Source: Magallana gigas
Lineage: Eukaryota
DNA: 64,000 nt
Direction of reading: 5' to 3'
NCBI RefSeq assembly: GCF_963853765.1
Contig: NC_088853.1
Location: forward strand, 16,306,001-16,370,000
Both the position numbers and the translations under genes were made by a program. Shown piece by piece: positions 1-48,610 of the stretch (position 1 is its first letter; each line of letters opens with the position of its first letter). The notes under the pieces were generated by a model. That model saw only the letters and a program-made list of their open reading frames with translations. It did no database searches and had not been told where the DNA came from.

Positions 1-2640
1 TTTAATTCACTCTTTATAAGGCCAATCACCAATTTCTGAAGAAAATTACTAGTCAAAACCTGTAAAAATCTCTACATACTGGTTTTTATGAGATTTCGAC
101 CACTTCTTTTTTTGCTAATTTTTCATGATTTTTCAGCGTTTTAGACCTCCCTCAGGTAATTCCCTGCAGAGGGTTGACCTTCCGTACCGCGTGCATGTTG
201 CACTATCACATGTCAAAAACTTACCGGTGTATAGTTTACAATGTCCCATCCACCTACTTTTCGTGTTATTTTACCTCCTGTCTGTAACTTGCAATTTCAC
301 TGTGTAAAGTCAACACAACAGTCATATCCGCAGGTTTCGTATTTTACTTCTGATTCTCGTGTACCTAAGATATGAAGCCTACATATTGCATATCAATTTC
401 AACAAAAGACACCCCTCTAACTAATGATAATCATTAAAAATCATTTCATGAATTTTAGCAACACTCATAAGCCTTCAAGTCAGCAACTCTCAATTTTACA
501 AAAATATTGACGGGTACTTTATTCGAAACCGTCCCTTGCTACCTTAGGCATGGTGAATTTATATCCAAGTGCTATATGTATGAAAGAATCAGTCATGTAA
601 GATATCATATTATATGATAGAATGTTTGATGACTTTAAACAAAAAGTTGTTCATGTTATATGCAATGCATCAAAATGTATATTGTATCAACATGTTGTTG
701 ACTACTTTTGTTTGCAACTTTATCTAAAGAAATCAATTCATGTAAAATATCGTAAATAAATTATGGTTGTATTCACATGACTTAAAGATTGAAACAGGGA
801 GGTGTGATAATTTAACACGTGACTTTTGCAACTTAACTGAGATTGAAGATGAATTAATTTTGTTTTACTTATTTGTCAATCTTTTCGTAGTTTAAGAGAA
901 AAGTATATTAAAAAATACTACTCCCGGAAACCAAGTATCTAGTATAAAGTTAAACAGTTACTATCTACATATACTTCAAATACCAAAGAACTGTGTAATT
1001 TATAAATCTTGGAATAAAGAACTTGAACATGCAAGATAATCAGTTTTGGGCAGAGTAAACATGCTGCCTTAAGATATTACTATGAAAACAATTTATGAAA
1101 ATAATGAAATCACCTACCAGTATACAGATTTGTATGAATAAAAAAAATATAAAATAAAATGGATCGCATTTCAACACATGGAACGCTAAGTTAAACAATG
1201 ACTAAAGTATTCAAGGATTAAAAAAAAATACTTTTTAAAGGATTAAATGTTTCCGAATTGTTAAAAACATTTTAAGTACATACTTAAGCAGTATTGTAAA
1301 CTCTGGTTCTAGGAATATATGGCGACACATAGGCCATTTCGACATCTGTTTGCACGAACCAATCACCAGGTAGAAAATACAGAGCAGTCATTGGCGTTTA
1401 AGGAACGTTTATAGTAAATAAAAATATCGTATTAATGTATTTATTTACTATTTTAATTATCTTTTGTGTTTTTATTGGTAAATACACCGAACGCATCTCC
1501 GAGCACACCGGCTTCCTTTCACATTAAAGACCCCCTCGCGCTGACACCCTGCTTAAAAAAAATGTACAACTTGTTTGTCGATTGTTGGATAATGATGCAT
1601 GAATAAAAAATAATTGCTTCGCAACTGAACTTAAATTTGACATGAATTCATAAAACTCATTTGGTCGCCATATTTTTTTTGATCGCTCTTCAATTGCTAC
1701 TGACGTTTAAACATGCACACCTGTCTCGAACGTTACGGCTTTAATTTTGATCGCGGCATTCAGGTTGCAAGAACTTCTAAATGCATGAATAACACATTAA
1801 AGGGTTTATTACACATGGGTAGGCGAATTTTTTGTTTACAACACAGGTGCTTGAGGACAAGATCGCCCCCAACCCCTCAACCCCCCAACCCTTCCACCCC
1901 ACCCCCAAGTATAAATACCCCGGTATTTTACTCTTTTTAAAAATTAAATTATATTATATTATGACATATTTCTAATCTAATTTATTCATTTATTGCCCCA
2001 ATATTACCTAAAACAAAAATTTTAGAAAAATAGACGCTCTCTATATATAATACAAGCATTCTGAGAGTATTGCATAAGCAATACACCTCCCCTACCGGTT
2101 TGTAGAAATTTGCGAAAATAATGCACTGTTATGAATATCTTCTGTACCCCGAATCAACAGACCAGCACAATAACGAATCCGATTGTAATAATTCAAAAAA
2201 ACCATCGATTAAATTTACAACACAAGGCTTGACACTATTTTACAGATATAATTTGTTTGTTAGAAACAATACAAGGAATGGTCCAAATAATGCACGATAT
2301 TATTACTGACTACATACTATTCTCGTTTATTCAAAACACACCGAACCCGATAACGAACCCGAACATAAACAATTGGAATATAAAAAATTAATTTTCGGAC
2401 AGACGGACTGACGGACGCAGAGGAAAGCTATAGTCCCCTCCGGTGAAAACCGGTAGGGGACTAACAAGAAGGTTGCTAACTTCGTCTGCAAGCCGAGAGG
2501 CACTGCCAATGAATATTTGTTGAAAAAAATGATAAAATAATATACTTCAGGAACAATTAAGTATATAAATAAAAGGCGAATGTGTGTAACAAATACAAAA
2601 ACCTTCCTGATAGTTTAGAGTTATCAAACATTGCTGAGGA
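1..2640 (+). repeat. Segmental duplication block A, copy 1 (partner 45676-48610)
   Basis: Collinear near-identity from tttaattcac... to ...ttgctgagga. Short ORFs 125..307 and 45804..45986 differ at only 4 of 60 aa. Several indels. Confidence 0.95.
2052..2463 (-). mobile_element. Helentron/HINE-like non-autonomous element, internally deleted
   Basis: Reverse complement of 3045-3896: end palindrome tagtcccctccggtgaaaaccggtaggggacta, (GGAC/AGAC)n, subterminal IR tcccctaccggttt, hairpin gtattgc-ataa-gcaatac. Structure matches DINE-1/pearl(CvA)-type elements. Confidence 0.8.
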
Positions 2641-28091: not shown

Positions 28092-28760
28092 GCTCAGGGA
28101 AATTCATTATCATCGTCCATGTTATTGAGCTATAAATATCCTGATATGACTTTCCCCATCGTGCTCGAGGAATTGCAGCGGTATATCTTTTCTCCGACCC
28201 CAATCCAGTGCAAGCTGCTTGCGCAATTGTACGCTCCTCCCCAATTGCTAGAACCGTAGTGCCAATTGCTGCCAAAATAGATTGTCTTTTAACATTAGTT
28301 TTTAACACAATATTAGTTTTCTTTTTATATTATGCCATAATTATATAAATTATAAATATTTTGAAAATGTGTTGAATAAGTCTATATCCGTTTGCTGGCA
28401 ATATGAAATGTTCAAGGTTTTTTTTTAAATCTTTGAATTCTAAAAACGTGCTAGCGCTGGAAATAAACACATGAAGATTTTAGGCATTATTGAAATATTT
28501 GATATTTTTAATGACAATTTAGAACGATTGTATATACATGTATGATATTTTTTTATACCAGAGTATGCAAAAGAGCATAAAGTTTGATATCAGTCAAAAT
28601 AATACTGCTAACGTTTTGAAGTCATGTGTTTTAGAATATATATTTTTATACCGAGACAGCTTTTCAGTGACGTTACAAAAAAAAACCATACGTTTCACAG
28701 TACTTATCTTTCATAAAACCAACAAAAATCTTTGAAATCAGCTGACAAACTGTGTCCGAA
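28092..28760 (-). pseudogene. Pseudogenised paralog of the secreted Cys-rich (CGPNFCCC) gene
   Basis: Exon-2 homolog 28268-28092 (IGTTVLAIGEERTIAQAACTGLGSEKRYTAAIPR) with AG acceptor and GTGAGT donor, 177 nt versus 187 nt (frameshift), two Cys->Tyr. Exon-1 remnant at ~28708-28740 lacks the ATG and has a GT->AT donor. Confidence 0.85.
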
Positions 28761-29220
28761 AAAACAGGAATATACATCTCACGGATATATTAACATTTCT
28801 TGAGATATGCCCTTGTTTTCCGTCAAAAAATGAATACGTTAGCATATTTGCACATCTTGTTATTAATAATGGCAGCTGTCGAGCCAAATCAATCATTTAA
28901 TTATAGTTAAAATTTTTCATAAATATGTGAATATGTTGCATTCGTTTTAAGCACGAGTTACTATTGATTTCTAATGGGTGGGATAGTGCCCCTTTATGTA
29001 AATAACGATCACCTGAAAGGATTGGTAACTATTTCATAATGTTATGTGTAGTCATTCCTTACAGATATTACATTGGTTAACATAAGGATAACAACGTCTT
29101 AATACGTTTTTTTTAATAATTTGACATAGTGATTTAAGCTGAAGTAGCAAGGAACATTTTATATAAAGTAGTCGTCAGTATTTAAGACAGGCATACCCTT
29201 GCTCTAGTAAAATGTAAAAA

Positions 29221-29767: not shown

Positions 29768-31009
29768 AGAAAATCATTATCCCGCTCCATCGCCAAGCCT
29801 ACATGATATACTACATGCAAGAAAATATTTGCTTATGTTTAATTTGTGTCCCTTCGAAATCTTTGTCACGGGCAAATTCAATACAGGGCCAATATTGACG
29901 TCTTTAATTATCTCTCTCTAAATACTGTTCATAGGCAAATTCAAGGTTGTCCGAAATTGCTTTAAAGTGTAGAAGGGCGAACATTGCAAGGGGCGAAAGT
30001 AACCAAGTTTACAGTATTTAGAATAATTTAAAGAGTAGATTGTACAATTAGAAATATGTTTGGGGGGTGGGGATTGAATTTTGTTTTTGTTGTTGTTGGT
30101 ATCTATACAATTTAATTGCAATATAATAAAGGAAGGGGGAGGGGTAATTCCTTCTTAAATATGTAGAATACGTTTAAAGTAAACTTAAAGTACATACATC
30201 CTCCCTTGATGATAAACAAAGATTTAAGGAGCCCTATTTTGGGCTTTTTGCGTAAACAAAAAACCAACAGCAAAACCTTGTATTCTCTAACCCTTTGTAA
30301 AACATCTTTAAAAATATGCCTACCGCTTCTATTTAACTTCATTCCATTTTCAGTTGGCCGAATTGCATAGCTTCAAACTGTGTCTAATTCCAGTATTAAA
30401 TCGTATTATTTATAGACATATTTACATTTTTTTTGCATGTAAGGTGTGTTGAAAGATACTGCAGTACATAAAGAGTATATTACGGTTAAAATGATGAGTG
30501 TTCTTACAACGCCACAAATGTTGAACGCTGTAAAATACAACATTACCAGCAAAGGTCAAATCTTTGCTTGTAATTGTAATAGTAGCTCTTCCATTCATAT
30601 AAACTGAACCTTTGTATAAAATAGGGTTTTTAACGTATAAATCACTTTTGCATACAATGCAAGAAGTTAAAAAATAAGCATTTAATTTTTTTTTTATATA
30701 GTCACATAACTGCAGCGGTGTGTGAATACAAATTTCAATATTTCGCTAACGTGGATAACTCAATACCTGTGCACACATTGCTGCAATTAGGAGACTATAT
30801 CTTTCAAGCAAAATGATTCAATGCTTAATTAGAATTTAGTGTACATATTATTCATCCTATTAGTCATGGGATTTATATTTTTAATTTCAATTTAGGCAAT
30901 GGTACTTGGAATGTTAGGGGGTAAATTGTTTTGGTTGTAACAATGTTAAACGATACACACATTTTCAGATTTGAAAGAAATTAAAGAGAGAGATATATAT
31001 ATATATATT

Positions 31010-31300
31010 TTTATTGCTGGTGACACAAAGCCGCCCGTCAATGTATACGTAGAGGATATCTCTCACAAGCTTCACTCGATGACGGGTCTTTCTGGCCTTT
31101 CTCTTAAGAGGGTATAATGTCTTTCTCTTCTCCTTATCTCTGGTGGGAACTGCTCATTAACCCAGATGTTGGATCCTTTTAGTTTCTTGGGTGCTTGGAA
31201 ACATACCAGTTTTCTATCCCTGAAGAATAAGAATTTAGCCACAATTTTTATTTGTTTCGTTCGAAATTCGTCTTTTTTCCCATCCTGTGCACTCGTTTGA
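31010..31300 (-). mobile_element. Fragment of a LINE ORF1 (L1-type RRM/CTD)
   Basis: IVAKFLFFRDR..KLKGSNIWVNEQFPPEI, then after a frameshift LVRDILY.IDGRL. Confidence 0.7.
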
Positions 31301-32757
31301 ACGAGATGTCCTGTGCAGCCAAATTGAAGATCGGTAATGACTTTATTCATGCACTAATTTAAAGGCAATACATCCAGTCTGAAATTCATTTACATCATAA
31401 CGATTTTTTAATATCACATATTGTCTATTATGCTAGAGTCAAATAGTGCAGAGCGATGTTTGATGAGGCAAACTATTTTTGGCAAGTTATTTCCTGTGTA
31501 TATTGACAATGTCATTATTATGTAGCTCACTTGTTCCCATGCTAATCCGATAAATAACAGATGGTACAATATCTTTTATGAAATGAAACTGCGAAGTAAT
31601 GTGTTATTAAAGTAAAATTATCTCCCCCTTATAATGCTTTTCAAATGAAAGTATGTTTGTTTCGTAAACTTACTTTACCATGTCAAACGAGTTTTTCTAA
31701 GAGAAGGTAGATAACTGAGACACCAGTCTCAGTTTGCAGCCACTAACAGCAGCCAATTAGCCTGTAGAAACTAGCAGCAAACGAGAAAAATTATCAAAGT
31801 ACTGAGAAAACTCGAACATAGAGCCATATTTGACTTTATCTTTGGAATACTTTAATAAACATTAAGACGATTAATGCATCAATAATCTGTGCTAGTATTG
31901 ATAACTGCAGAGATAGTAAATCTCTCTTGGACAAGAGTTATAAAATAAGTCTGCATTATAGAAGTTAAATCATTATTAATCTTTGTATATACGGGTAATA
32001 AGTTATAAAAAGAAGTGTTCTTGAAGATGTAGTGTAATTAAAAAAGGGAAAAAATTAGAATCATCGCATAAAGTAATATAAAAATAAGTGATAATATATA
32101 AGACATATGTTTTCGTTTAAAAGGTTATCCTTTCTTCTTTTTTAATCTTTTCATATCCTTGGAAACAACATGAATCGACAAATAAAAAAGAATCACTATT
32201 ATTACTGTTATCGGGCAATTTGATATCTAACATTGTGATTTTATTCCTCGCAGTCGAGAATTTTAAGGTTAAATTGGTATAACTTTAATTTAGGATATTG
32301 TTTTTATATACAGATTACTGCAACCAGTGTGTCCGTCAAAAATATTCAGAGTTACTTTATATTAAATGTCCTTGTTACCTCGGCCTAGTTGTTGAATTAT
32401 AGAAAGGCTTATTTAGACATTGTTAATTTTATGTTCAGAAATATAGAACGGATAAATACAATATTTATTACAAATGATTCCATTGATGCTTAGCGCACCC
32501 ACATGTTAATATGAAATATGTTACTATTCTATTGTTAACCAATTCTTTTAAATTATCATTATTTTGATGAACAAACACTATCCCACCCTTTGTGAATAAT
32601 AGCAACATGCGCTTTAATCGAAGACAACGTGTTTAAGTATCAATAACAAATTAAAACTATAATCAAACGATTGATTTGGATTGCAAGCTGTCATTTTTAT
32701 TAACAAGATGTGCAAATATGCGTTTGTGTTCAAATGAGACACTCCCTGAAAATTGAG

Positions 32758-32790
32758 TATAAAAGATATATATATCCATGTTTGTTCAGA
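32758..32790 (+). promoter_or_regulatory. TATA box + Inr-like motif of the Cys-rich gene
   Basis: TATAAAA at 32758-32764. The A of TCAGAC is 30 bp downstream (32788). ATG at 32841. Confidence 0.55.
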
Positions 32791-32840
32791 CACAGTTTGT
32801 CAGCTGATTAAAATATAGCTATAAGAAGCAACTGTTCAAC

Positions 32841-35800
32841 ATGGTTTCAAACATTTTTGTTGGTTTCATGATAGGTGAGTACTGTAAATTTATGGTAAAG
32901 GAATAATGTTAAGAGAAATATTTTATAGTACTAAATGTATGTCTTTGTTTCATTTGTATCCTATATTTTTTGAAAGGCGGTTGAATAGTAATTTAAGTCC
33001 GGAAGTTTCAATTTCAGGAAACACTGAATATGTTTAATGCAGGATTCATTCTTTTCCAAAGGTTATAGCTCTATTTAAGGTGGGTCGCAGGTTTACCCCA
33101 TAACAAATCTCACGACAAACGTGCCCTGAAAATTTGTTTAATCGTTATTTAGGATAAACAGATCATTATATATATTTTTGATCAAATTTGCCTACGATTT
33201 TTTATGCAATGCCGCTCTAAACTTTGTTTGTGGTGCTGTTTTGACGCTCTTCTAAGGAAATATATAGGAAAGATGAGCATATTTCTCTTTATATTCGAAA
33301 TCGAGTTATTTTGCGAAATTGCAAATATCCTCTAAAACTTATCAACTGTTTCTATGTGTACAGAAAACGTGATTTACAAATTATGTATGTAAAAAATCAT
33401 ATGTGTTCTGGCTAGATTTTATGTTTCTGATTATTCTACCAAACATTAGAGTAGCATGAGTTCGACGTCAACAATGTTAAACTGTTCCTATTACTCAGTG
33501 ATAGCAATCATTTAAACACTATATTCAGGACTTCTAAAGCTAAAACTTTTACCCATTTAATGTGCAAAGGACGATGCAGTTTCTTTTTACAAAACTATTT
33601 TCCACAGAACAAGAGAAAAGAGACAACTTTTTACTTACACGCACATATACCCATGTTCGAAAACATACCTTTGTAACAGTTCAAGTGACAATTTTCCTAG
33701 TGATTAGACCACCTACCGTCATAAAATTGCATATATACATATATTAAGACTTTTTAAGAATATGAAAGAGATTAAATATATTTTTATCATTATTTCAAAG
33801 TTTTTAATTGGGGCGCAGCCTCTCGTGTACCTCCGGTTTTATGTACATTAATTCATCTATTCAGTTGATATTGAAAAATATTCACAAGAAAAGTTAACTT
33901 TTACACTTTTATTCGAAATCAGATGATGCATTACATAATCTTCTAAATATCTTAAATCACGAAGAGAACGAAGGCATCAAATTTGTTAAGTGCAAGATTA
34001 TCCAGTTCACCTTTTCCATATTAATTTGCTCAGTCGGAATATAAGTTAAACATAATGTATATTGTAATCTTGAATCTAGAAAACGGATGATATTTGTAAG
34101 TTGTGGGCATTTATTTTGCTTATCAAGATCTTCACAACTAAGAAAATATAACTCGCCGACTGTACTCTTCCCAATTTTTCGGACAAAATGGTTACATGTA
34201 ATACTATAATAATATATTATTGATATATTATATGATATTATATTAATTCAACAACTAATCAATAATATTAGAAAATATAAATCCCCGCCTGTACTCTTCC
34301 CTTTTTTGGGATAAAATAGTTACATGTAATAATATAATAATATATCATTGATATATCATATCATTTTATATTAATTTATAGCTTTTGGCTTTAGAGTGTA
34401 ATGGGGAAACTTGAGATGTATCCGTTATGATGTCATAAACTAATGTTCACAAAAGGGCCATGCAAATTGTATAAATTGCGTACAGAATTTGATGACGAAA
34501 GCACACCCGCCGCCCATCTTAAGTGGGAACAATAAAACCTCTAAAAACGTTGCAATAGAAAACTCCATTTATTTAATCAAAGTACTGATAGTACTGAAAA
34601 GCGCTAACCCAGCTTCTGTTTGTAAAAGATATATGTATATAACATTTTAGTTTCTGTATACGCAATATATTTCCTCATCACTGCGTGGCAATGATGTATG
34701 TAAGCCCTGTACATCAAATTCACAGTAGCCCATACTAGCCCGTGCAGCTCCTGAAACTGGTTCCCTAACCAGTTTAAATGATGTAAACTTCTGCTCATAG
34801 GGGGCGGTTATTCCTTGCACCGGAAGTAGAAGTCTAACGACAATAAAGCGCTGAGCTATGCTTAGCGCTTTAAAAAGACTACATCTCAGATGAATTACTG
34901 ATTTGGTTACAATTAAATATTTTTTTAATCAAATATTATAATTAATTAATCTAATTAATCTAATCTAATCTAATTAATATCTTAATTAAATAAATTTTTA
35001 AATTAATAAGTTACCCTAAAAATTATATTGTTGTCTGAAACAAAATAAAAGAAAACATCAATACTTATAATATTATCGTTATCTCTCTTTGAACTCAATT
35101 TGTTGAGTTAAAATGCATTAAATTTGTGAAAGCAAGCATAGTGTTTAAACTATATTAAAAAAAAGATGTTGTCATTTCTGCTTTAACAGAGGTCAATACT
35201 CACAAGCGTCATTTATCGTTGAATAAACCCTTTAAGTTGGTATTTAGGGTGTTTACTATTTCCAACCTTTCGCATTAAAAAAAACATGGCCGTCAAATCT
35301 TAACAAAAAAGTTTGCTTGTTCTGCATCAAGGGGGTATCTTTTAGTCGTTTCGTCTAGCTTTTAAATTTCAGTAACTTCTCCGAGACTCAAACCAAAGCA
35401 AAACAGAATCAGATTAGGTGTAAATATAGAAAAGACATATTATCAAAGATGAAATAACCTAAAAATAGCATATCCTTTTAATTTGATTTGCCGTTCTAAA
35501 TTCATAAGAGTATTATAATTGAAGTGTTGGGAACGCAGATCATTGGAAGCATCGGCGATGATCATGCCATTGCAACATCTGCTTGCATTGGTCTATCATC
35601 AACTAGAAGATACACCGCCGCCATTCCCCGCGACTGTCATGGTGGGAAGTCGTGTAAAGATATCTGTTCATCTGTAAAAACCATGGATGAAAATAATGGC
35701 GGTTACGGAGCGTAAGNNNNNNNNNNNNNNNNNNNNNNNNNNNNNNNNNNNNNNNNNNNNNNNNNNNNNNNNNNNNNNNNNNNNNNNNNNNNNNNNNNNN

Positions 35801-36051
35801 NNNNNNNNNNNNNNNNNNNNNNNNNNNNNNNNNNNNNNNNNNNNNNNNNNNNNNNNAACAATAATATTGTACTTATCTCTCTTTTTTTTATTGGTAGCCC
35901 TCAATGCTTCAATGCTCTTCACATATATCCTGGTAATCGCGGCCCAAAAAACACTGCAAACACTAAATGGATCAACACATGGATCTATGGAGGCAATGAT
36001 GGGTGTACTCAAACACACTGCGGACCCAACTTCTGCTGTTGTTTATTGTAG
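32841..36051 (+). CDS. Uncharacterised small secreted cysteine-rich protein (124 aa, 10 Cys, C-terminal CGPNFCCC)
   Basis: Exons 32841-32874, 35525-35711, 35898-36051, phases 1 and 2, one frame: MVSNIFVGFMIVLGTQIIGSIGDDHAIATSACIGLSSTRRYTAAIPRDCHGGKSCKDICSSVKTMDENNGGYGAPQCFNALHIYPGNRGPKNTANTKWINTWIYGGNDGCTQTHCGPNFCCCLL*. AATAAA at 36062. An N gap lies inside intron 2. Confidence 0.85.
34141..34380. repeat. Tandem dimer of a ~129-bp unit
   Basis: agaaaatataa...tgtactcttccc...gttacatgtaata occurs twice. Confidence 0.8.
34598..34871 (+). mobile_element. Small HINE-like element (subterminal IR + hairpin)
   Basis: aaagcgctaa at 34598 is complementary to ttagcgcttt. Hairpin aaagcgctgagc-tat-gcttagcgcttt at 34845-34871. 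Confidence 0.4.
35717..35856. other. Assembly gap (140 N)
   Basis: Run of N, inside intron 2 of the Cys-rich gene. Confidence 1.
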
Positions 36052-37259
36052 TTAAATGAATAATAAACAGTTAGTCTGTCAATTTGGTCTTATTTCAGTT
36101 AAACATTTTCAGTACATCACTTCAAGAATTATAGCAGAAAGACAAACACAATGCTAGGCGTTAATCATCATATACAGTATAGACATTTTCCAGTACGGAG
36201 TAGTATTGTCGGTTTATTAAACTGGACAAGTAAAACATGAAAACAACACAGGAACTATTGCTCAAAGCCAAGCATAAGTTAAAGTATATCAGACCCTGTA
36301 CATTGAGTTATTACAAACAGTCCCATTAAATTCCCTGAAGCGGTAGGGAAGGTCAGACGGGTTAGAATTTTTATGTCTCAATCGAGTGCTCAGAAAGGTA
36401 TTGAATATGACGGTTTGTCAACTTAATTAATTACTGCATTAAATGCATCAAATTTTGTGCCTTTAATAGAATTTGAATGTATGGAATGACTGGTTCCAGG
36501 GTATTTACATAGAGGGAAGAATAGCATTCCGGTTTGAAGTCCAGCTGGTAGGGGACGACTTTGAAAACTTGTAATGCTTTTTGACGCCTTACCGGAATGT
36601 TATCCTTCCATCATTGGTGCGGAAGGCTAAAAAGGCCTTCTAAGTGTAATCTACCAAACCAATTGAGAGGACGGAATAATAAATCCGGAATAAGAAGGGT
36701 TTCAATCGAGCGCGCCCCCCTTAAACGATCCTTTAATGCTTTAAACATTTTCAGAAATATAGAATGTTAATTTGTTATTAAGAAAATCAATAATTTTGTA
36801 TTTAGAAAAAAACCAGTCATAACGGATTCCTAATACGCTTACTCTGACTCCTCGGTCAATGCAACGTTTTTCATTCATGAGCTTAACAATCTATAGGTTA
36901 TCTATTTGGTTAAACTGATGTTATGTGTTATGGCTTTGATCCACTTTGTTTTTATGAAAAAAGGGATACACAAGATTGAGATGCGTAGTAAATGGATAGG
37001 CGTTCAGTGACTGGCTTGAATAATAGTGATTTTGATTATATACTTTAAACAAAGCTGATTAGTCCGATTATGAAGCATATTTCGTATTTTATATGTATTT
37101 ATAAATGAATATTCTAATTGTTTCTTTGATTATTTTTTTTTTGTTTTTTTTTTTTTTTTGTAATGAATTTATTAATTTCATACAAGAACAGTTATATCAT
37201 AATGACAAAGCATGAAAGTTTTCAAAAAATGTTAAATGGCCTAAATTGAAAAAACTTGT

Positions 37260-37316: not shown

Positions 37317-40300
37317 TTATGTAAATAAATGTTGCCATATTTCCCATCTGTTATTAAATTCATTCATTTTATTTTCCACACCTGCAGTGTATTTTATTGC
37401 CTTAATATATGATTCGATCTCATGTAGTACTCCAAGGACTGATAAGTTACTTTTAAAGCATCTGCTTCTGTATATGTATTGCTTAACTAGCATAAATATA
37501 ACATTGCTCTGTCTAATATTTTCTTTAGTTTTGTATTCTCCAAACATGAAAGTATCTTGATTCAGTTCAATATCTATATTCTTTATTTGACAAAAGTTTA
37601 TGAAGTTATTAAGAAGCTGCTGTACAGTTGGGCAATTCCACATTAGGTGGCAAATTGTTTCCTCTTCACTATGACATAGATTACATAATTTTGAATCAAC
37701 TTTCCCAATTTTAAACATAATACTATTTGTTGTTAAAATATTATGATTGATGCGATATTGTAGCCATTGTAACTTAGCACTATTGGTAGTAAAAAATGGG
37801 ATAGAATATATCTTTTTCCATTGTAAGTCAGTAATTTCAAAGATTTTCCCCCACTTTTCCTGTGCACCTGGCTTGACTTCTGATCTATTTAATACATCAT
37901 ACATAGCTTTTGATCCTTTTCTTGTTGTGACAAAAATCTGGATATTTATCGGAATAAAAGGTTTATCTAAACATACATCTCTGTATATATTACACTTTCT
38001 CATATCAGATATTATAGCCTGCTTGATTCCTAAAAAAGTTACATAGTTTGTTTTTATATTAAACTTCAATTTTAGTGTATCTAAAGATATAAAATTCCCC
38101 CGTTCATTCAGTAGGTCGTTGACATATATGATATTATTTTTATACCAAGATCTGTAAAAAACTGTTTCTTTCCCTATTTTAAATCTTTTATTATGCCACA
38201 AAGGCTGGCTAATATATTCTTTCCAATTACTAATTTGGTTTTTATCTTGAATGTCCTTGAACGCTATAAAAACATCTTTCCAAAAATCATTTTTAATATT
38301 CTCTTTTAGGCCAACTAAGTATTCAGTTCCTGTGCTTAATAAAAGTTCGATATCTACTATGTTTTGTAACAAGGTTTTCCACTTTGAATTGTTATTAAAA
38401 AGAATTCTTCTTATCCATGTAGATTTTAATCCTTTTATATAATTTTCTAAGTCAAGCATTTTCAGCCCTCCATGAGAATATTTTTGTGTAACAATCTTTC
38501 TTTTTACTTTATCAACATCAGAGTTCCATAGAAATCTAAAAATAATGCTATTTAGTTCTTTCGTTAGTATAGGTTGCGGGTTTGGTAAAGTTATAAATAA
38601 GTGGTTAAGTTGAGATATGATTAGAGATTTTATAAGAGTTATTCTTCCAATTGGTGTTAAGTTACGCTTTTTCCATTGTTCTATTATACTTTTTATTTTT
38701 ACCAGTTTTTTGTCATAATTCAATTTATTTATTCTTGTTAAGTCCACATCATAGTGAATGCCCAATAGTTTAAAGTTTGTTGTCCATTCGAAATTAATTT
38801 CTGTACAGATTTTGTCTTCTGAATATTTTTTACTTCCTATCCATACAATCTGGGTTTTTGCATTATTCATTTTAAGCCCTGACATGATATAAAACTTCTC
38901 CAACTCTTCCATTGTTGCATTTAATGACTTTTCTGATCCATCCAGAATTATAACTGTATCATCAGCATACTGTGATATTATATATTCATTATCGTTTATT
39001 TTTATACCTTTAATATCTTTGTTATGTTTTATATTTATTGACAATATTTCAGCACATAGCAAAAAAATGTATGGAGAAATAGGGTCTCCTTGTCTGCAGC
39101 CTCTTTCTAAATTAAAAAAATTAGATAAGATGCCTGCTTGAGTTACACATGACACAGACTTATTTTGAAAAGTTTTAACCCAATTTGAAATTGACGGGCC
39201 AAAATTGAAGTAGGATAGGACTTTATAAATGAATTTCCAAGACACCGAGTCAAAGGCTTTTTCAAAATCAATCATAGCTAGGACTCCAGGAATATTACAT
39301 ATTTCAGTGTAGTTCATTAAATCATATATTAATCTCGTATTTTCGCCAATATATCTGCCTGAAATGAAACCCGATTGGTCTGAACTTATTATTTTGTTTA
39401 AAGTGTGTTTAATCCTTCTAGCTATACATCCTGATCCAATTTTATAAACTGTATTAAGTAGAGTTATAGGTCTCCAATTTGCAATGTTAAATTTACTTTT
39501 ACCCTCTTTTGGTACACATGTTATTATCCCCTGTTTCTGTGTTGATGATAATTCTCCAATTTCATAACCCCAGTTTAAAGATCTTATAATGAAATATCCT
39601 AACTTGTTCCAAAACATTTTAAAAAATTCAGCTGTAAAGCCATCACTTCCAGGGCTTTTGTTATTTGACATGTTTTTTAATATTGTTAATGCTTCATCAT
39701 ATGTAATTTTTCCCTCTAATTTTTCACGTTCTGAGTCATTTAATTTCATAACATCTGTGAAAGTTATTCTATTCAAATCAAATTCCGCTGTATCTACATT
39801 TGTTTTTGCATTATATAAATTTTTATAGAAAATTGCTACTTCTTTTAAAATGTGTTCCTGTTTATTAATTTCTACATGTACATTGTTGTCCTGTTTTATA
39901 AGCTTAGGTATAATTTTATTTACATAATGTCTGTTTTCCAAATTTAAAAAGTAACTGGTAGGTTTTTCGCCTTCGCTTAGCCATTTCGCTCGTGATCTAA
40001 CTAAATTTCCCATTTGCTTATGCTTTCTTATGTTTTCTAGTTCTTGTTTCTTTTCATATATTATATCCATATTCATTTCATAGTCTTCCTCTAATGAGCC
40101 TATTTCTTCTATAAGTTTCTGTTCAGCAATTGATCTACTTTTTTTTAAATAGCTTGCAAATGAAATAGTTTTACCCCTGATTTCGATTAGCAGCGTTTCC
40201 AAAAATAGCTGGTCATTTATAAAAAATTGTATTTCAGGGTCTGGTAAATCTAAAATATTTTCCCTATTATATATAGGCAATGCATATTGTTTTTTAATTT

Positions 40301-41108
40301 CATCAATATGATTATTGATTGATTGTACATATTCAGGTATATTTAAAAGAGAGTTATTAAATTTCCATAGGCCTTTACCATGTTTGAATTCATTCAGTTT
40401 CAACAATATCATAATTGGTGAATGATCTGACCTATAGCTAGTTAATATGTCACATTTTTGAACTTGTGTTATCAATGAAGTTGATATCAGGAAAAAGTCT
40501 AGCCTTGCTTGTTTTAATGGATTAGATTTTCTCCAAGTATATCTTTCTATGTTTGGGTGAAATTCTCTATAAATATCTGCTAAATCAAAATAACTAATTA
40601 GCTCTAATAGTTTTCCTCTTGCTTTCGGGTTATTTACATGCAAATAATTAAAATAATCTTTGGATGTATCTATAACCATATTATAATCACCTACAATAAT
40701 TATTTCTTCATTATTTATTCTTGTTATTATGTCTGATAGTGTTTGATAAAAAGTGGGAGAATCTTCATTAGGTCCATATATGCATGCTAAAGTTAATCTC
40801 TTATTCTCAATTTTGATATCTAAAGCTAATAAATTCCCATTATCATCCTTCACACACTCATATATATTATATTCAAAATTACTGCTGAAAAGTATTGCAA
40901 TTCCTCTTGAATTAGATGCATAAGAGTTAAATACAACTTCAAAACCCCATTCGTTTCTGATATTGTTTTCAATTTCCTCTGTGAAATGAGTATCTATCAA
41001 ACAAAGAATGTTACAGTTTTGTTTTCTGTAATACTCGAAAACGTCTTTTCTTTTTTTATCGTCATTCAGTCCTTGACAGTTTACAGAAAGTATCTTAATG
41101 TCCGACAT
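37317..41108 (-). CDS. LINE ORF2p: APE endonuclease + reverse transcriptase + zf-RVT (1263 aa)
   Basis: SVNCQGLN, GDYN, RLDFFL, SDH; WRPITLLN.VYKI, DFEKAFD, RQGDPISP, QYADD; C-terminal CNLC..ETICHLMWNCP. No stops. Confidence 0.97.
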   Translation of the reverse strand: MSDIKILSVNCQGLNDDKKRKDVFEYYRKQNCNILCLIDTHFTEEIENNIRNEWGFEVVFNSYASNSRGIAILFSSNFEYNIYECVKDDNGNLLALDIKIENKRLTLACIYGPNEDSPTFYQTLSDIITRINNEEIIIVGDYNMVIDTSKDYFNYLHVNNPKARGKLLELISYFDLADIYREFHPNIERYTWRKSNPLKQARLDFFLISTSLITQVQKCDILTSYRSDHSPIMILLKLNEFKHGKGLWKFNNSLLNIPEYVQSINNHIDEIKKQYALPIYNRENILDLPDPEIQFFINDQLFLETLLIEIRGKTISFASYLKKSRSIAEQKLIEEIGSLEEDYEMNMDIIYEKKQELENIRKHKQMGNLVRSRAKWLSEGEKPTSYFLNLENRHYVNKIIPKLIKQDNNVHVEINKQEHILKEVAIFYKNLYNAKTNVDTAEFDLNRITFTDVMKLNDSEREKLEGKITYDEALTILKNMSNNKSPGSDGFTAEFFKMFWNKLGYFIIRSLNWGYEIGELSSTQKQGIITCVPKEGKSKFNIANWRPITLLNTVYKIGSGCIARRIKHTLNKIISSDQSGFISGRYIGENTRLIYDLMNYTEICNIPGVLAMIDFEKAFDSVSWKFIYKVLSYFNFGPSISNWVKTFQNKSVSCVTQAGILSNFFNLERGCRQGDPISPYIFLLCAEILSINIKHNKDIKGIKINDNEYIISQYADDTVIILDGSEKSLNATMEELEKFYIMSGLKMNNAKTQIVWIGSKKYSEDKICTEINFEWTTNFKLLGIHYDVDLTRINKLNYDKKLVKIKSIIEQWKKRNLTPIGRITLIKSLIISQLNHLFITLPNPQPILTKELNSIIFRFLWNSDVDKVKRKIVTQKYSHGGLKMLDLENYIKGLKSTWIRRILFNNNSKWKTLLQNIVDIELLLSTGTEYLVGLKENIKNDFWKDVFIAFKDIQDKNQISNWKEYISQPLWHNKRFKIGKETVFYRSWYKNNIIYVNDLLNERGNFISLDTLKLKFNIKTNYVTFLGIKQAIISDMRKCNIYRDVCLDKPFIPINIQIFVTTRKGSKAMYDVLNRSEVKPGAQEKWGKIFEITDLQWKKIYSIPFFTTNSAKLQWLQYRINHNILTTNSIMFKIGKVDSKLCNLCHSEEETICHLMWNCPTVQQLLNNFINFCQIKNIDIELNQDTFMFGEYKTKENIRQSNVIFMLVKQYIYRSRCFKSNLSVLGVLHEIESYIKAIKYTAGVENKMNEFNNRWEIWQHLFT

Positions 41109-41559
41109 GAGCCGATAGAAAGATTATTTTTAACTTACAATTAACATCGCAAACGTGGAAATTAATGAAGTAATTCAAACAAATAAAATTTTGGGTAAAC
41201 AGTAATGTCAAAGAGAGTGAAAGAAGAGAAAGTATGAAGAAGATAGAATACCTTTGTGTAGACATGCTCACTATAACTATGACACAAGGTAAACGTCAAC
41301 TTTTGCAATTTCAGTGTCCATAAACACAAACCGGATGTTTTATATGTGCAGTTAAAAAAAGAATGAAATAGTTGAACATAATAAATCCGGAAAAAAAAAT
41401 TAGGTGGAGTAACTGTACATTTGAAAGTTGGTATAATGTTCACACGTGTAAATAAATACATTGCACTTAACATTGTGCGAGAAAATTATGGAGTTTTTTT
41501 TTTAGATCCGATATAAATATTCGCAAGGATTCGCAATAGGTTTCGCAAGGAAACCTATT

Positions 41560-42801
41560 TTATAGGTTGTCCAGTAAGTTCGCAACATCGCACACATGTT
41601 CCTCCATAATATGGAATCTCTCGGGACCCAGTCGCGTGTGACCACTCCGCCGTGTAATGACCACCGCTATATTCTGCATTTGATTAGTTTTTATATAGTG
41701 TAGTAAACGCCTGCCCGCTCCATGCTCCCCATCGTCATAGTATCCTTCTTGGATCCTGCTTGAGGAGTCCGTGAAACGATATACAAGAATTCTGTGATCA
41801 GCTGATGCTGAAAATGGGTCCAAATTTACTTTTTGGTAAAGGTTTTGGACATCGCTAGATGATGATACTCTTGCTCCGCTTGCAAATATTTCCGACCCTT
41901 TTTTTTGAGTCGGGTCCGTTGAAACGGAATCTACTAGTTCCACATCTTGCGTCGCAATTTGTAATACATCAGAAGATTCCAGTTTTGGAATTGGTTCCTG
42001 GTACTTTTCGCCGTTTGGTAATACGATTCGGCCCCTCTCGACCTTTGTTCTGATATTCTGCGATCTTAACATATCTGAGATGGCGTAAAGGCGTTTTTTT
42101 TCCTCCACCATAACTGTGGGTTCCTGTGTTGTTATGAAAAAAGGGAGGGTTACCTTTGCCATTTTTTTAGATTTTTGAGCTTGTAGTAGCTCATCTTTCA
42201 TCTTTCGATCTACTAATTTCCCTGTAATTGACACTGGTTTGGAATTAACAACACCTTTTACGCTGTTTCTGTGGATTCTCACGAATTGGATATCGACTCC
42301 TAATGTGTCTTTAATTGTTTCGGGGATGATCTGCATTAAATTTTCGCCTTGTTTGTACGGAAAGTTGTGAATAAGAATGTTGTGTCTCATGGACCTTGCC
42401 CTCAAATCTGTTACCTCAGACTTCACATTTTCCATTTTTCTATCGAATTTGATCAGCATAGCCCTCATGAGATCGAGCTCCCTCCGCAATTGTGCGTTTT
42501 CTGCGCGGACAATATGAATTTCGTCGTAATTACTCTCTGCTTGTTCTCCAATATAATTGACAGTTTTTGATATCCCCATATCTGGATCTTCTAAAGTTTT
42601 TTTAATGGCCTGAATTTCACTGTATATCGGCTCATATCTCGAAAGTTTTTTACTTAAATCTTTTACTGTCTTTTGTAAGGATTGAAAATCCTTTAAAGGT
42701 ACCGTTACCTGTTTGTTTTCGTCAGCTGGCTTCGGTGAGTTCTCCTCCCCGGGCTTTTTGTTGAACATTTTTACAGGCCTTTGTTGTTTACCTGTTGACA
42801 T
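41560..42801 (-). CDS. LINE ORF1p: coiled coil + L1-type RRM/CTD + C-terminal IMPACT/UPF0029-like domain
   Basis: First ATG at 42801 (the track starts at GTG 42807). DLRARSMRHNILIHNFP and IQFVRIHR are L1 ORF1 motifs. aa ~301-410 contain ADHRILVYRF, DDGEHGAGRRLL, NIAVVITR and LGPERF. Confidence 0.9.
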   Translation of the reverse strand: MSTGKQQRPVKMFNKKPGEENSPKPADENKQVTVPLKDFQSLQKTVKDLSKKLSRYEPIYSEIQAIKKTLEDPDMGISKTVNYIGEQAESNYDEIHIVRAENAQLRRELDLMRAMLIKFDRKMENVKSEVTDLRARSMRHNILIHNFPYKQGENLMQIIPETIKDTLGVDIQFVRIHRNSVKGVVNSKPVSITGKLVDRKMKDELLQAQKSKKMAKVTLPFFITTQEPTVMVEEKKRLYAISDMLRSQNIRTKVERGRIVLPNGEKYQEPIPKLESSDVLQIATQDVELVDSVSTDPTQKKGSEIFASGARVSSSSDVQNLYQKVNLDPFSASADHRILVYRFTDSSSRIQEGYYDDGEHGAGRRLLHYIKTNQMQNIAVVITRRSGHTRLGPERFHIMEEHVCDVANLLDNL

Positions 42802-45675: not shown

Positions 45676-48610
45676 TTTAATTCACTATTTATTTATAAGG
45701 CCAATCACCAATTTCTGAAGAAAATTACTAGTCAAAACCTGTAAAATTCTCTACATACTGGTTTTTATGAGATTTTGACCCTTTCATTTTTTGCTAATTT
45801 TTCATGATTTTTCAGCTTTTTAGACCTCCCTCAGCTAATTCCCTGCAGAGGGTTGACCTTCCGTACCGCCTGCATGTTGCACTATCACATGTCAGAAACT
45901 TACCGGTGTATAGTTTACAATGTCCCATCCACCTACTTTTCGTGTTATTTTACCTCCTGTCTGTAACTTGCAATTTCACTGTGTAAAGTCAACACAACAG
46001 TCATATCCGCAGGTTTCGCATATTACTTCTGATTCTCATGTACCTAACATATGAAGCCTACATATTGCATATCCATTTCAACAGGAGACACCCCTCCAAC
46101 TAATGATAATCATTAAATATCATTTCATGAATTTTAGCAACACTCATAAGCCTTCAAGTTAAGCAACTCTCAATTTTACAAAAATATTGACGGGTACTTT
46201 ATCCGAAACTGTCCCTTGCTACCTTAGGCATGGTGAATTAATATCCCAGTGCTATATGTATAAAAGAATCTGTCATGTAAGGTATCATATATAATAGAAT
46301 GTTTGATGACTTTAAACAAAAAGTTGTTCATGTTATATGCAATGCATCAAAATGTATATTGTATCAACATGTTGTTGACTACTTTTGTTTACAAGTTTAT
46401 CTAAAGCAATCAATTCATGTAAAATATCGTAAATTAATTATGGTTGTCTTCACATGACCTAAAGATTGAAACAGGGAGGTGTGATAATTTAACACGTGAC
46501 TTTTGCAACTTAACTGAGATTGAAGATAAATTCAATTTTTTTTACTGATTTGTCAATCTTTTCGTAGTTTAAAAGAAAAGTATATTAAAAAATACTACTC
46601 CAGAAAACCAAGTATCTATAAAGTTAAACAGTTACTATCTACATTTACTTCAAATACCAAAGAACTGTGTAATTTATTAATCTTGGAATAAAGAACTTGA
46701 ACTTGCAAGATAATCAATTTAGAGTAAACATGCTGACTTAAGATATTACTATGAAAACAATTTATGAAAATAATGAAATCACCTACCAGTATACAAATTT
46801 GTATGAAAAAAAAAATAATATCGATCACATTTAAACACATGTACAGGGAACGCTAAATTAAACAATGATTAAAGTATTCAAGGATTATAAAACAATACTT
46901 TTTAAAGGATTAAATGTTTCCGAATTGTTAAAAATTGTTTAAGTACATACTTAAGCAGTATTGTAAACTCTGGTTCAAGGAATATATGGCGACAAATAGA
47001 CCATTTCTACATCTGTTTGCACGAACCAATCACCAGATAGAAAATACAGCGCAGTCATTTACCGCGACTGTACCTGCGGAAAGTCATGCGCAGAAATCTG
47101 TGCCGATATGAATGAATTTGACGACGTTTCAGGAACGTTAGTAAATAAAACTATTGTATTTATGTATTTCAAACAAAACTATGGCAGGGTTTAATGTTTA
47201 TAGAAATCAGTTTTGATATATTTAATACCTGTGTAAGAATGCTTATTTACTATTTTGATTATCTTTTGTTGTGTTTTTATTGGTAAATACACCGAACGCA
47301 TCTCCAAACACGCCGCCTTCCTCTCACATTAAAGACCCTCTCGCGCTGACACCCTGCTTAAAAGTTGTATAACTTGTTTGTCGATTGTTGGAAAATAATG
47401 CATGAATAAAAAATAATTGCTTCACAACTGAACTTAAATTGAACATGAATTCATAAAAACATTTGGTCGTTATATTATTTTTGATCGCTCTTCAATTGCT
47501 ACTGACATTTAAATATGTACACCTGTCTCGAACGTTATGGCTTTAATTTTGATCGCGGCATTCAGGTTGCAAGGACTTCTAAATGCATGAATAACACATT
47601 AAAGGGTTTATTACACATGGGTAGGCGAATTTTCTGTTTACATCACAGGTGCTTGAGGACAAGATCACCCCCAACCCCCCCCCCCCCCCCAACCCTTCCA
47701 CCCCATCCCAAGTATAAAGACCCCGGCATTTTACTCTTTTTAAAAATTAAATTATCCTTTTATGACATATTTCTAATCTAATTTATTCATTCATTGCCCA
47801 AATTACCTAAAACAAAAATTTTAGAAAAAATAGACCCTCTCTATATATAATACAAGCATTCTGAGAGTATTGCATAAGCAATACACGTCCCCTACCGGTT
47901 TGTAGAAATTTGTGAAAATAATGCACTGTTATATGAATATCATTTCTTACAGTCTTCTGTACCCCGAATCAACAGACCAACACGATAACGAGTCCAATTG
48001 TAATAATACAAAAAACCCTGCCGATTAAATTTACAACACAATGCTTGACGCTATTTTACAGAACTAATGGGTTTGTTAGAAACAATACAAGGAGTGGTCC
48101 AAGTAATGCACGATATTATTACTGACTACATACTTTTCTCGTTTATTCAATACACACCGAACACGATAACGAACCCGAACATAAAAAAACGGAATATAAA
48201 AAATAATTTCCTCGAACATATGTCAACCAGACGCTACGAAAGTGTAAACTTGATCTGAAGTTTGACATTTTGAAGCTATTCAGCAAATTTCATATTATTC
48301 CTAAAACACTAAAAAGAAAAAAAGTGTGGAAAACTGAAGTGGGACAGACAGACGGACGGAAGGACAGACGGACGGACGGACGGACCCAGAGGAAAGCTAT
48401 AGTCCCCTCCGGTGAAAACAGGTAGGGGACTAACAAGAAGGTTGCTAACTTCGTCTGCAAGCGGAAAGGCACTGCCAATGAATATTTGTTACAAAAAAAA
48501 TGATAAAATTAAAACTTCAAGAATAATTAAGTATCTAAATAAAAGGCGGAAGTGTGTAACAAATACAAAAAACGTCCTGATAGTTTAGAGTTATCGAACA
48601 TTGCTGAGGA
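45676..48610 (+). repeat. Segmental duplication block A, copy 2
   Basis: Matches 1-2640. Extra segments at ~47060-47125, ~47170-47245 and ~48210-48340. Confidence 0.95.
47852..48432 (-). mobile_element. HINE-like element, counterpart of 2052-2463
   Basis: Same termini and flanks; retains a segment deleted in copy 1. Confidence 0.85.

What the first reader, a model, noticed from the sequence alone, without database searches (positions are those of the whole stretch)
32841..36051. Hidden 3-exon gene for a small secreted 10-Cys protein ending CGPNFCCC
Seen: three exons, not recovered as a gene by the ORF track, join in frame (phases 1 and 2) into a 124-aa protein. It has a hydrophobic N-terminus, TATA/Inr upstream and AATAAA downstream. 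The mature part has 10 Cys, ending CFNALHIY-x25-GC-x4-CGPNFCCC. It is not a defensin, C1q, FReD, CTLD or knottin pattern that I recognise. I recall similar unnamed CFN.LH.Y...CGPNYCCC tails in uncharacterised marine-invertebrate proteins, but this is unverified. Inference: a stand-alone member of an unnamed disulfide-rich domain family. Its small size, likely secretion, duplication/decay and proximity to a C-type lectin suggest an immune or mucosal effector.
Basis: partly seen in the sequence, partly recalled or inferred. Interest (0 to 1): 0.8.

Follow-up and report, generated by a model that had tools for sequence, protein, structure and literature searches.

The report
Oyster homologue of mussel antimicrobial myticusin
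The three-exon gene is real, spliced and transcribed, and it encodes an oyster member of the myticusin family, a 10-cysteine secreted antimicrobial peptide so far characterised only in mussels; it is a new member of a known kind, not a new kind of gene.

Summary
Exons 32841-32874, 35525-35711 and 35898-36051 (+) join in frame to a 124-aa, 10-Cys protein. RNA contigs from four studies carry both junctions. The N gap (35717-35856) lies inside intron 2, and the mRNA joins 35711 directly to 35898, so the gap adds no exon and does not change the frame.

The family is not wholly unnamed. The nearly identical RefSeq protein, XP_034321919.1 of Crassostrea gigas ("uncharacterized"), differs from the window protein at 3 residues. 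It is 49% identical (E 1e-34) to myticusin-alpha of Mytilus coruscus and has the same cysteine spacing. Myticusin-1 is a purified 104-aa, 10-Cys antimicrobial peptide ending CGPNFCCCIS.

The gene is one of at least 17 copies in this genome. They lie in a tandem array whose repeat unit also carries a C-type lectin exon, and decayed relics of the gene are present in the window.

Antimicrobial function is inferred from homology only. No paper in the library searched reports an oyster myticusin.

The parts
32758..32765 (+). TATA box (TATAAAAG)
   Evidence: Read. Invariant in the four near-identical copies. It lies about 35-42 nt upstream of the first base of the RNA contig that starts at 32800.
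32800..32874 (+). Exon 1: 5' UTR from about 32800, CDS 32841-32874 (MVSNIFVGFMI + 1 nt), donor GTGAGT
   Evidence: RNA contigs of 4 runs cover 32800/32814/32823 to 32869. The X4 contig begins at 32800 right after adaptor letters. The last bases 32870-32871 differ in the RNA (ATATTAG against the window's ATGATAG), as in paralogues L040 and L041.
32875..35524 (+). Intron 1 (2650 nt, phase 1). It holds a dispersed repeat at about 34553-34926.
   Evidence: Skipped in contigs of all 4 runs (table 5). The stretch 34553-34926 is covered by many unrelated contigs with loose ends (tables 2, 7).
35525..35711 (+). Exon 2 (187 nt): end of the signal peptide, predicted cleavage ...GSIG|DDHA..., and Cys 1-4 of the mature peptide
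   Evidence: Contigs in X10, X4 and X7 cover 35523-35711 with 0 other letters. This includes the copy-specific bases 35693A and 35698G. tblastn of myticusin-alpha against this exon gives E 1.8e-14.
35712..35897 (+). Intron 2 (phase 2, GT..AG), containing the assembly gap 35717-35856
   Evidence: The joint 35711->35898 occurs in contigs of X10 and X4 and in loose ends of X1, with no letters between. Paralogue introns are 151-162 nt without N. The gap's letters were not read or filled.
35898..36051 (+). Exon 3 coding part: Cys 5-10, CFNALHIY...GC-TQTH-CGPNFCCCLL, stop TAG
   Evidence: Contigs cover 35898-36009/36022. They stop at the paralogue-variable bases 36008-36012. Invariant family residues are C3, Y10, Y30, C36 and GPNFCCC.
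36062..36067 (+). AATAAA polyadenylation signal, 11 nt after the stop
   Evidence: Read. The 3' end was not covered by the RNA contigs, so the signal is unverified.
28111..28281 (-). Decayed exon-2 relic of the 8-Cys subfamily, with Cys replaced (PRARWGKSYQDIYSSI) and no exon 3 nearby
   Evidence: tblastn: 77% identity to P0127, E 8e-22. A promoter-like fragment lies on the same strand at about 28736-28780 (L044).
46928..47137 (+). Exon-2-like pseudogene fragment with in-frame stops
   Evidence: E 2e-12, stops inside the match.
1249..1392 (+). Exon-2-like pseudogene fragment with in-frame stops
   Evidence: E 1e-4, several stops.
19538..19735 (+). C-type lectin domain exon, part of the same segmental-duplication unit
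   Evidence: PF00059, 41 bits, above the curated cut-off, at C1:16325538-16325735. The same exon recurs 16-19 kb upstream of six myticusin-like copies.

Best explanation
This is an intact, transcribed member of the myticusin gene family in a Crassostrea (Magallana) oyster.

The 124-aa precursor carries a 22-residue signal peptide. Cleavage is predicted after GSIG. This is the position that aligns with the N-terminus (TDHQ...) of the myticusin-1 sequence listed for mussel. It would release a 102-aa mature peptide of about 10.9 kDa, pI about 8.1 and net charge about +2.

The peptide is predicted to fold into a compact alpha/beta domain. Ten cysteines would form five disulfides. Co-loss of cysteines across the family points to C49-C115 and C77-C110. 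The remaining three bonds would link C32, C55 and C59 to the terminal CCC.

By homology with myticusin-1 and myticusin-beta, the peptide is most likely a secreted humoral or mucosal defence peptide that acts directly on microbes, more strongly on Gram-positive bacteria.

The peptide is only weakly cationic. The family also conserves a set of polar or aromatic residues (R47, H82, Y84, Y104, N118). I therefore infer binding to a specific envelope ligand rather than non-specific membrane lysis.

The gene sits in a tandem array made by segmental duplication of a unit that also holds a C-type lectin gene. Some copies in the array are decaying.

Shown here: gene structure, splicing, transcription, family membership, array structure, absence of a known fold.
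Inferred: cleavage site, disulfide pairs, antimicrobial activity, mode of action.
For: Gene structure and frame.

Splicing and transcription: both junctions occur in RNA contigs from four studies, and exon 2 matches this copy's own diagnostic bases.

Family membership:
- A profile of exon 3 finds P0018, the myticusin-alpha precursor AFJ04410.1, and P0002, XP_034321919.1 of C. gigas.
- P0002 differs from the window protein at 3 residues.
- P0002 against myticusin-alpha is 49% identical over 108 residues, E 1e-34.
- The Cys spacings are 9,16,5,3,17,32,4,4,0,0,2 against 9,16,5,3,21,30,4,4,0,0,2.

Published properties of myticusin:
- Myticusin-beta is antibacterial and antiprotozoal (PMC10608444).

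Structure and disulfides: the AF2 model has pLDDT 85.8 and pTM 0.77. Cys co-loss is seen for (77,110) three times and for (49,115) (and genome copies).
Against: - No functional test exists for any oyster member.
- Myticusin's own mechanism is unknown.
- The mature peptide is nearly neutral, which is unusual for membrane-active peptides.
- In Mytilus galloprovincialis, myticusin transcripts rose after sterile injury rather than after Vibrio infection (PMC6401078).
- The domain also forms the C-terminus of large multidomain proteins, with C1q + H-lectin or in triple repeats. That fits a binding module as well as a killing one.
- The exon-1 end seen in the RNA matches two paralogues rather than this copy. 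Logan contigs can be chimeric among copies that are 96-98% identical.
- Tissue of expression and induction were not available, because the run metadata are coded.
Confidence: 0.8

Rival explanations
1. The protein belongs to the myticusin family, but its main role is not to kill microbes. It would be a recognition or signalling module instead: cytokine-like, wound-response, or ligand-binding as in a lectin.
For: - The same domain ends multidomain proteins that carry C1q and H-type lectin domains, coiled coils, or three tandem copies.
- In M. galloprovincialis, myticusin transcripts are induced by injury and not by infection. The authors suggest roles in proliferation or chemotaxis (PMC6401078).
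- The mature peptide is nearly neutral.
- Polar residues R47, H82, Y84, Y104 and N118 are conserved across phyla.
Against: Myticusin-1 was isolated as an antibacterial peptide, and myticusin-beta is reported to have antibacterial and antiprotozoal activity. The short stand-alone form with a signal peptide is the form that showed this activity.
Confidence: 0.2
2. The copy in the window is itself silent. The spliced RNA would come only from the near-identical paralogues at C1:16.27 and 16.49 Mb, or from alleles of them.
For: In all four runs the RNA contigs end exon 1 with ATATTAG, as paralogues L040 and L041 do, and not with the window's ATGATAG. De Bruijn contigs cannot phase variants that lie more than 31 nt apart.
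Against: Contigs in three runs carry 35693A and 35698G with 0 other letters, and these bases distinguish this copy from L019 and L020. They lie within 19 nt of the exon 2-3 junction, so words of 31 letters link them to the spliced form. The copy's TATA box, ATG, splice sites and frame are all intact. C. angulata XP_052695472.1 shows that I10/L11 occurs as a natural variant.
Confidence: 0.1
3. The assembly gap hides a further exon, or marks a misjoin, so the true protein differs from the 124-aa model.
For: The gap's length is only an estimate. One contig (X7) continues from 35711 into other letters.
Against: The direct 35711/35898 joint is seen in three runs. Three paralogues have N-free introns of 151-162 nt at the same place. 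The annotated 124-aa orthologues align end to end. The X7 letters occur nowhere in this genome with up to 2 mismatches, so that contig is chimeric or foreign.
Confidence: 0.03

Closest known systems
Myticusin-1 / myticusin-alpha (Mytilus coruscus; AFJ04410.1; Liao et al. 2013, Fish Shellfish Immunol 34:610, cited via PMC5484132 and PMC10608444)
   Same: - A signal peptide followed by a mature peptide of about 102-104 aa.
- Ten Cys with the same spacing.
- 49% identity, E 1e-34.
- The same DH..A.SAC start and the same THCGPNFCCC end.
- Both are from bivalves.
   Different: - The host is an oyster, not a mussel.
- The loop between Cys 4 and Cys 5 is 4 residues shorter.
- The loop between Cys 5 and Cys 6 is 2 residues longer.
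- The predicted pI is higher (8.1 against 6.8).
- No activity data exist for the oyster protein.
- In the oyster the gene lies in a tandem array that also carries a C-type lectin gene.
Myticusin-beta (Mytilus coruscus; Oh et al. 2020, Fish Shellfish Immunol 99:342, cited via PMC10608444)
   Same: It bears the same family name. [quoted passage not shown]
Other cysteine-rich bivalve antimicrobial peptides (defensins, big defensins, mytimacins/macins, mytilins, myticins)
   Same: They are small, secreted, disulfide-rich peptides of hemocytes or mucosa, encoded by multigene families with copy-number variation.

Membership tests
Myticusin family | Precursor made of an N-terminal signal peptide and a mature peptide of about 104 aa, with no other domain | tested here: met
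   The precursor has 124 aa. Residues 1-22 are hydrophobic and end S-I-G (small residues at -3 and -1). The mature part has 102 aa. The predicted cut aligns with the first residue of the listed myticusin-1 sequence. No signal-peptide predictor was available.
Myticusin family | Ten cysteines in the mature peptide with the family spacing, ending CGPNFCCC | tested here: met
   Spacing is 9,16,5,3,17,32,4,4,0,0,2 against 9,16,5,3,21,30,4,4,0,0,2 in myticusin-alpha. All ten Cys columns are at least 90% conserved in 67 family sequences.
Myticusin family | Significant full-length sequence similarity to myticusin-1/alpha | tested here: met
   BLASTP of P0002 (3 differences from the window protein) against P0018: 49% identity over 108 residues, E 1e-34. 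tblastn of P0018 against the window: exon 2 E 1.8e-14, exon 3 E 7.4e-11.
Myticusin family | Antimicrobial activity of the mature peptide (Gram-positive stronger than Gram-negative or fungi) | not testable with these tools
   Activity is known only for the mussel peptides (PMC5484132, PMC10608444).
Myticusin family | Expression in hemocytes or mantle, and induction after challenge or injury | not tested
   Transcription and splicing are shown. The tissue and treatment of the runs are coded, and contigs give no expression levels.
CS-alpha-beta defensins / macins / knottins / C-type lectins (considered) | The characteristic fold or a Pfam profile match | tested here: not met
   - Pfam: no family for the exon peptides or for P0002.
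- PDB profile search: 0 hits at E<=10.
- Foldseek against PDB: best E 1.5.
- ESM Atlas by shape: TM <= 0.41.
- AFDB: matches only uncharacterised homologues.

The most novel reading that the evidence does not exclude
The myticusin domain would be an ancient, structurally new five-disulfide fold. It is spread from sponges and cnidarians to amphioxus, occurs in protist transcriptomes, and is found in at least one giant sulfur bacterium. It would act as a specific ligand-binding defence module. Oysters would have expanded it together with a C-type lectin as a two-gene recognition-plus-effector cassette, with diversification concentrated at residues 68-70 and 111-112.
Probability: 0.15. Interest if true: 0.6.

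Novelty: new member of a known kind. Interest (0 to 1): 0.35.

Why it matters
A review still lists myticusins as mussel peptides with 'no homologs among known AMPs' (PMC10608444). In the papers I could search, oysters have no myticusin on record.

This locus shows that Crassostrea carries an expressed myticusin array of many copies. That adds a peptide family to the oyster's immune repertoire, which is relevant to Vibrio and OsHV-1 disease in aquaculture.

The wider result is that the family is a domain of about 95 aa with a broad phyletic range, no Pfam model and no solved structural relative. This gives a clear target for building a family model and for structure determination.

For the genome scan, the lesson is that the finding is a correctly read but ordinary eukaryotic gene that RefSeq already predicts.

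Tried and rejected
- Alternative acceptors around 35525 all give stops or the wrong frame.
- The X7 contig runs from 35711 into 'CCCGCACGGG...'. These letters are absent from the window and from the whole genome, so I treated the contig as chimeric or foreign and not as an alternative exon.
- Pfam on the exon peptides and on nine family proteins gave nothing for the domain. It found only C1q and H_lectin elsewhere in P0093.
- A profile search against PDB sequences gave 0 hits.
- Foldseek against PDB, VIA-align wide and the ESM Atlas by shape gave no credible match.
- The ESM Atlas by features returned only unnamed mollusc clusters.
- A paper search for the RefSeq and UniProt accessions gave 0 papers. 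Searching for the motif found only the two reviews that print the myticusin-1 sequence.
- A crude WIGL/WxWxD motif scan missed the C-type lectin exon. The Pfam-based genome search found it.
They were inferred from Cys co-loss instead.
The exon peptides by reference, and the database protein P0002 (3 differences), served as proxies.
Full report
**1. The observation**

The region was read and the model recomputed.
- Exon 1 is 32841-32874 (34 nt, donor GTGAGT).
- Exon 2 is 35525-35711 (187 nt, donor GTAAG).
- Exon 3 is 35898-36051 (154 nt including the TAG stop). A long pyrimidine tract and TAG precede it.
- Together they give 375 nt, intron phases 1 and 2, and a 124-aa protein with 10 Cys.
- Every other AG acceptor near 35525 gives a stop or the wrong frame.
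- One small correction: the spacer between CFNALHIY and GC is 24 residues, not 25.
- TATAAAAG lies at 32758-32765 and AATAAA at 36062-36067.

The N run 35717-35856 begins 5 nt after the exon 2 donor and ends 41 nt before the exon 3 acceptor.

I laid Logan contigs from four runs of four studies on 31000-36600. X10 is on record as RNA. The others are guessed to be RNA.
- X10 and X4 each hold one contig that joins 35711 directly to 35898 (GT..AG, skipping 186) with no letters between.
- Loose ends in X1 show the same join from both sides.
- No intronless copy exists in the genome. Exons 2 and 3 are always separate hits. The joined form is therefore RNA.
- Three paralogues have an N-free intron 2 of 151, 155 and 162 nt with the same GTAAGT donor and TAG acceptor.

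Only lengths and splice sites of the paralogues were read. The gap is intronic and changes neither the continuity nor the frame of the mRNA.

One X7 contig leaves 35711 for other letters. These letters occur neither in the window nor anywhere in the genome. I treat that contig as chimeric or foreign.

**3. Transcription of this particular copy**

All four runs join exon 1 to exon 2. The aligner writes this as 32869->35523 with 'ATT' between. That is the predicted 32874/35525 junction with two base differences...CATATTAG in the RNA against ...CATGATAG in the window, which changes M10I and I11L.

The promoter and exon 1 of the four near-identical copies were aligned.
- The copies at C1:16.27 and 16.49 Mb carry ATATTAG.
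- The window copy carries ATGATAG with an intact GT donor.
- The copy at 16.445 Mb has its donor mutated to AT.

In exons 2 and 3, the window copy differs from its intact paralogues only at 35693 and 35698 (plus 35649 for one of them) and at 36008-36012.
- Contigs of X10, X4 and X7 cover 35523-35711 with no other letter. They therefore carry the window's own bases, which lie within 19 nt of the exon 2-3 junction.
- Contigs stop at 35692 or at 36009, where the paralogues diverge. This is expected when several copies are expressed.

I conclude that the window's type of exon 2 is transcribed and spliced. The exon 1 difference is either an allele or a contig chimera; C. angulata XP_052695472.1 has I10/L11. 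The X4 contig starts at 32800 directly after Illumina adaptor letters. This fits a start site about 35-40 nt downstream of the TATA box.

**4. What the protein is**

Pfam finds nothing in the exon peptides. I made a profile of exon 3 from 14 genomic copies and searched it against 1.84 billion representative proteins. It found 110 clusters at E<0.001. Two of them identify the protein.
- P0002 is XP_034321919.1 / A0A8W8P031, 'uncharacterized protein LOC117688208 [Crassostrea gigas]'. It has 124 aa and differs from the window protein at 3 residues. Its 90% cluster also holds two C. angulata proteins.
- P0018 is the myticusin-alpha precursor of Mytilus coruscus (AFJ04410.1).

BLASTP of P0002 against P0018 gives 49% identity over 108 residues, E 1e-34. 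The spacing of the ten cysteines is the same except for two loop lengths. tblastn of myticusin-alpha hits both coding exons of the window directly.

The literature describes the mussel peptides as follows.
- PMC10608444 lists myticusins as hemocyte peptides of 104 aa and 10 Cys with 'no homologs among known AMPs'. It reports antibacterial and antiprotozoal activity for myticusin-beta.
- The first residue of the listed myticusin-1 sequence aligns with D23 of the oyster protein (...GSIG|DDHA...). The predicted product is therefore 102 aa, about 10.9 kDa, pI about 8.1.

The organism is a Crassostrea/Magallana oyster. This is an inference from the nearest database proteins.

**5. The family in this genome and the neighbourhood**

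Exon 3 has 17 matches and exon 2 has 20.

| Group | Location | Identity to the window copy, and state |
|---|---|---|
| Four near-identical copies | C1:16.27-16.49 Mb | 96-98%; one is broken by a frameshift or stop in exon 2 and by a mutated exon 1 donor |
| Five copies, 8-Cys subfamily | C1:16.15-16.48 Mb | 60%; correspond to P0127; lack C49 and C115 |
| Two copies | C6 | about 75% |
| Six distant copies | C5 and C6 | about 40% |

The window itself holds three decayed exon-2 relics:
- 1249-1392 (+), with stops;
- 28111-28281 (-), with cysteines lost;
- 46928-47137 (+), with stops.

A Pfam search of the genome places a C-type lectin exon at window 19538-19735. The same exon lies 16-19 kb upstream of six myticusin-like copies. 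The lectin and the myticusin-like gene therefore belong to one segmentally duplicated unit.

Transposons flank the gene:
- a BEL/Pao element at 5979-10394;
- a LINE at 37317-42807 on the minus strand.

**6. The domain beyond oysters**

I aligned 67 family sequences and ran a second, profile-based search. Together with cluster look-ups and AFDB matches, these show the same domain of about 95 aa: AQAxCxA...AVRRxC...CxxIC...CFNALHxY...YRYxxC....CGPN[FY]CCC.

Taxa in which it was found:
- oysters, mussels, Dreissena, clams (Ruditapes, Mercenaria, Mya, Mactra);
- the brachiopod Lingula;
- cnidarians (Nematostella, Actinia, Xenia);
- the sponge Ephydatia;
- amphioxus;
- protist transcriptomes (Goniomonas, MMETSP).

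It occurs in three architectures:
- alone behind a signal peptide;
- at the C-terminus of longer proteins, one of which carries C1q and H-type lectin domains;
- as three tandem copies.

One member is encoded on a 23.8-kb contig of Candidatus Parabeggiatoa with bacterial neighbours. Apart from the myticusins, every named member is 'uncharacterized'.

**7. Fold**

AlphaFold2 with the 67-sequence alignment gives mean pLDDT 85.8 and pTM 0.77. After the signal helix, the model is an alpha/beta domain with helices at 24-35, 55-61 and 106-111 and strands at 42-46, 76-83, 101-103 and 119-123.

No solved relative was found.
- Foldseek against PDB: best E 1.5.
- HMM against PDB sequences: no hit.
- ESM Atlas by shape: TM <= 0.41.
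- AFDB clusters: only uncharacterised homologues.

These blanks do not prove a new fold, but no known fold is indicated.

Cysteine co-loss across the alignment suggests two of the five disulfides.
- C77 and C110 are lost together in three independent sequences.
- C49 and C115 are lost together in the 8-Cys subfamily.

**8. Mechanism and rivals**

The best reading is a secreted defence peptide stabilised by five disulfides that acts directly on microbes, as shown for the mussel peptides. The peptide is nearly neutral, and R47, H82, Y84, Y104 and N118 are conserved across phyla. I therefore favour binding to a specific envelope ligand over non-specific membrane disruption. This last step is inference only.

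The main rival is a binding or signalling role. It rests on the domain's presence in multidomain proteins and on induction by injury rather than by infection in M. galloprovincialis (PMC6401078).

Two minor rivals were considered: that only the paralogues are expressed, and that the gap hides an exon. The RNA evidence argues against both.

**9. Novelty and verdict**

The gene is a new member of a known kind.
- RefSeq already predicts it, as 'uncharacterized'.
- It belongs to a family with a characterised founder.
- No paper in the searched library reports an oyster myticusin or cites these accessions.
- The breadth of the domain and its lack of any profile or structure appear undescribed.

Interest is moderate to low for the locus itself. 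It is somewhat higher for the domain family.

Noticed in passing
window 19538-19735 (+); genome C1:16135562, 16173866, 16260406, 16297059, 16325538, 16432320, 16472415: A C-type lectin exon recurs 16-19 kb upstream of six of the myticusin-like copies. The array C1:16.13-16.52 Mb is therefore built from a duplicated lectin + myticusin unit. The lectin at 16297059 is followed only by a decayed relic and a BEL/Pao element.
   Followed up: partly
L047:8001-8423 (+) (GCA_030378085.1, contig JAUCGK010000403.1): A 140-aa homologue with a signal peptide and all ten Cys is encoded in a Candidatus Parabeggiatoa sp. HSG14 contig among bacterial genes (BrnA antitoxin, PIN, OmpA, FGE-sulfatase). It may be a transfer between a marine eukaryote and a giant sulfur bacterium, or a binning artefact.
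   Followed up: partly
window 34553-34926 (intron 1): This stretch is covered at high depth by many short RNA contigs with unrelated loose ends in all four runs. It behaves like a dispersed repeat (SINE/MITE-like) transcribed from many other loci, not like an exon of this gene.
   Followed up: no
residues 68-70 (35693-35698) and 111-112 (36008-36012) of the protein: All coding differences between the window copy and its two intact near-identical paralogues are non-synonymous and fall in these two spots. Database alleles show N/T/S at residue 68 and Q/K/N at residue 112. The numbers are too small for a test, but this hints at diversification or gene conversion.
   Followed up: partly
L007-L011 (C1:16.15-16.48 Mb) and protein P0127: This subfamily of five genomic copies has lost Cys 49 and Cys 115 together, leaving 8 Cys. 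Three unrelated family members have lost Cys 77 and Cys 110 together. This natural co-loss points to two of the five disulfide pairs.
   Followed up: yes
window 37317-41108 (-) and 41560-42807 (-): A LINE lies 1.3 kb downstream of the gene. Its ORF2 has endonuclease + reverse transcriptase domains, and its upstream ORF carries a UPF0029 (IMPACT/YigZ-like) domain (58.7 bits).
   Followed up: partly
window 5979-10394 (+): A BEL/Pao LTR retrotransposon (Peptidase_A17, RVT_1, integrase zinc finger, rve). Its pol region is split over several ORFs.
   Followed up: no
protein P0116 (Logan transcript contig, 146 aa): A transcript-derived protein of the same 90% cluster reads ...CCCLLQLNE. In that allele or copy the TAG stop is replaced by a Gln codon, and the protein runs 4 residues further to the next stop.
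   Followed up: no
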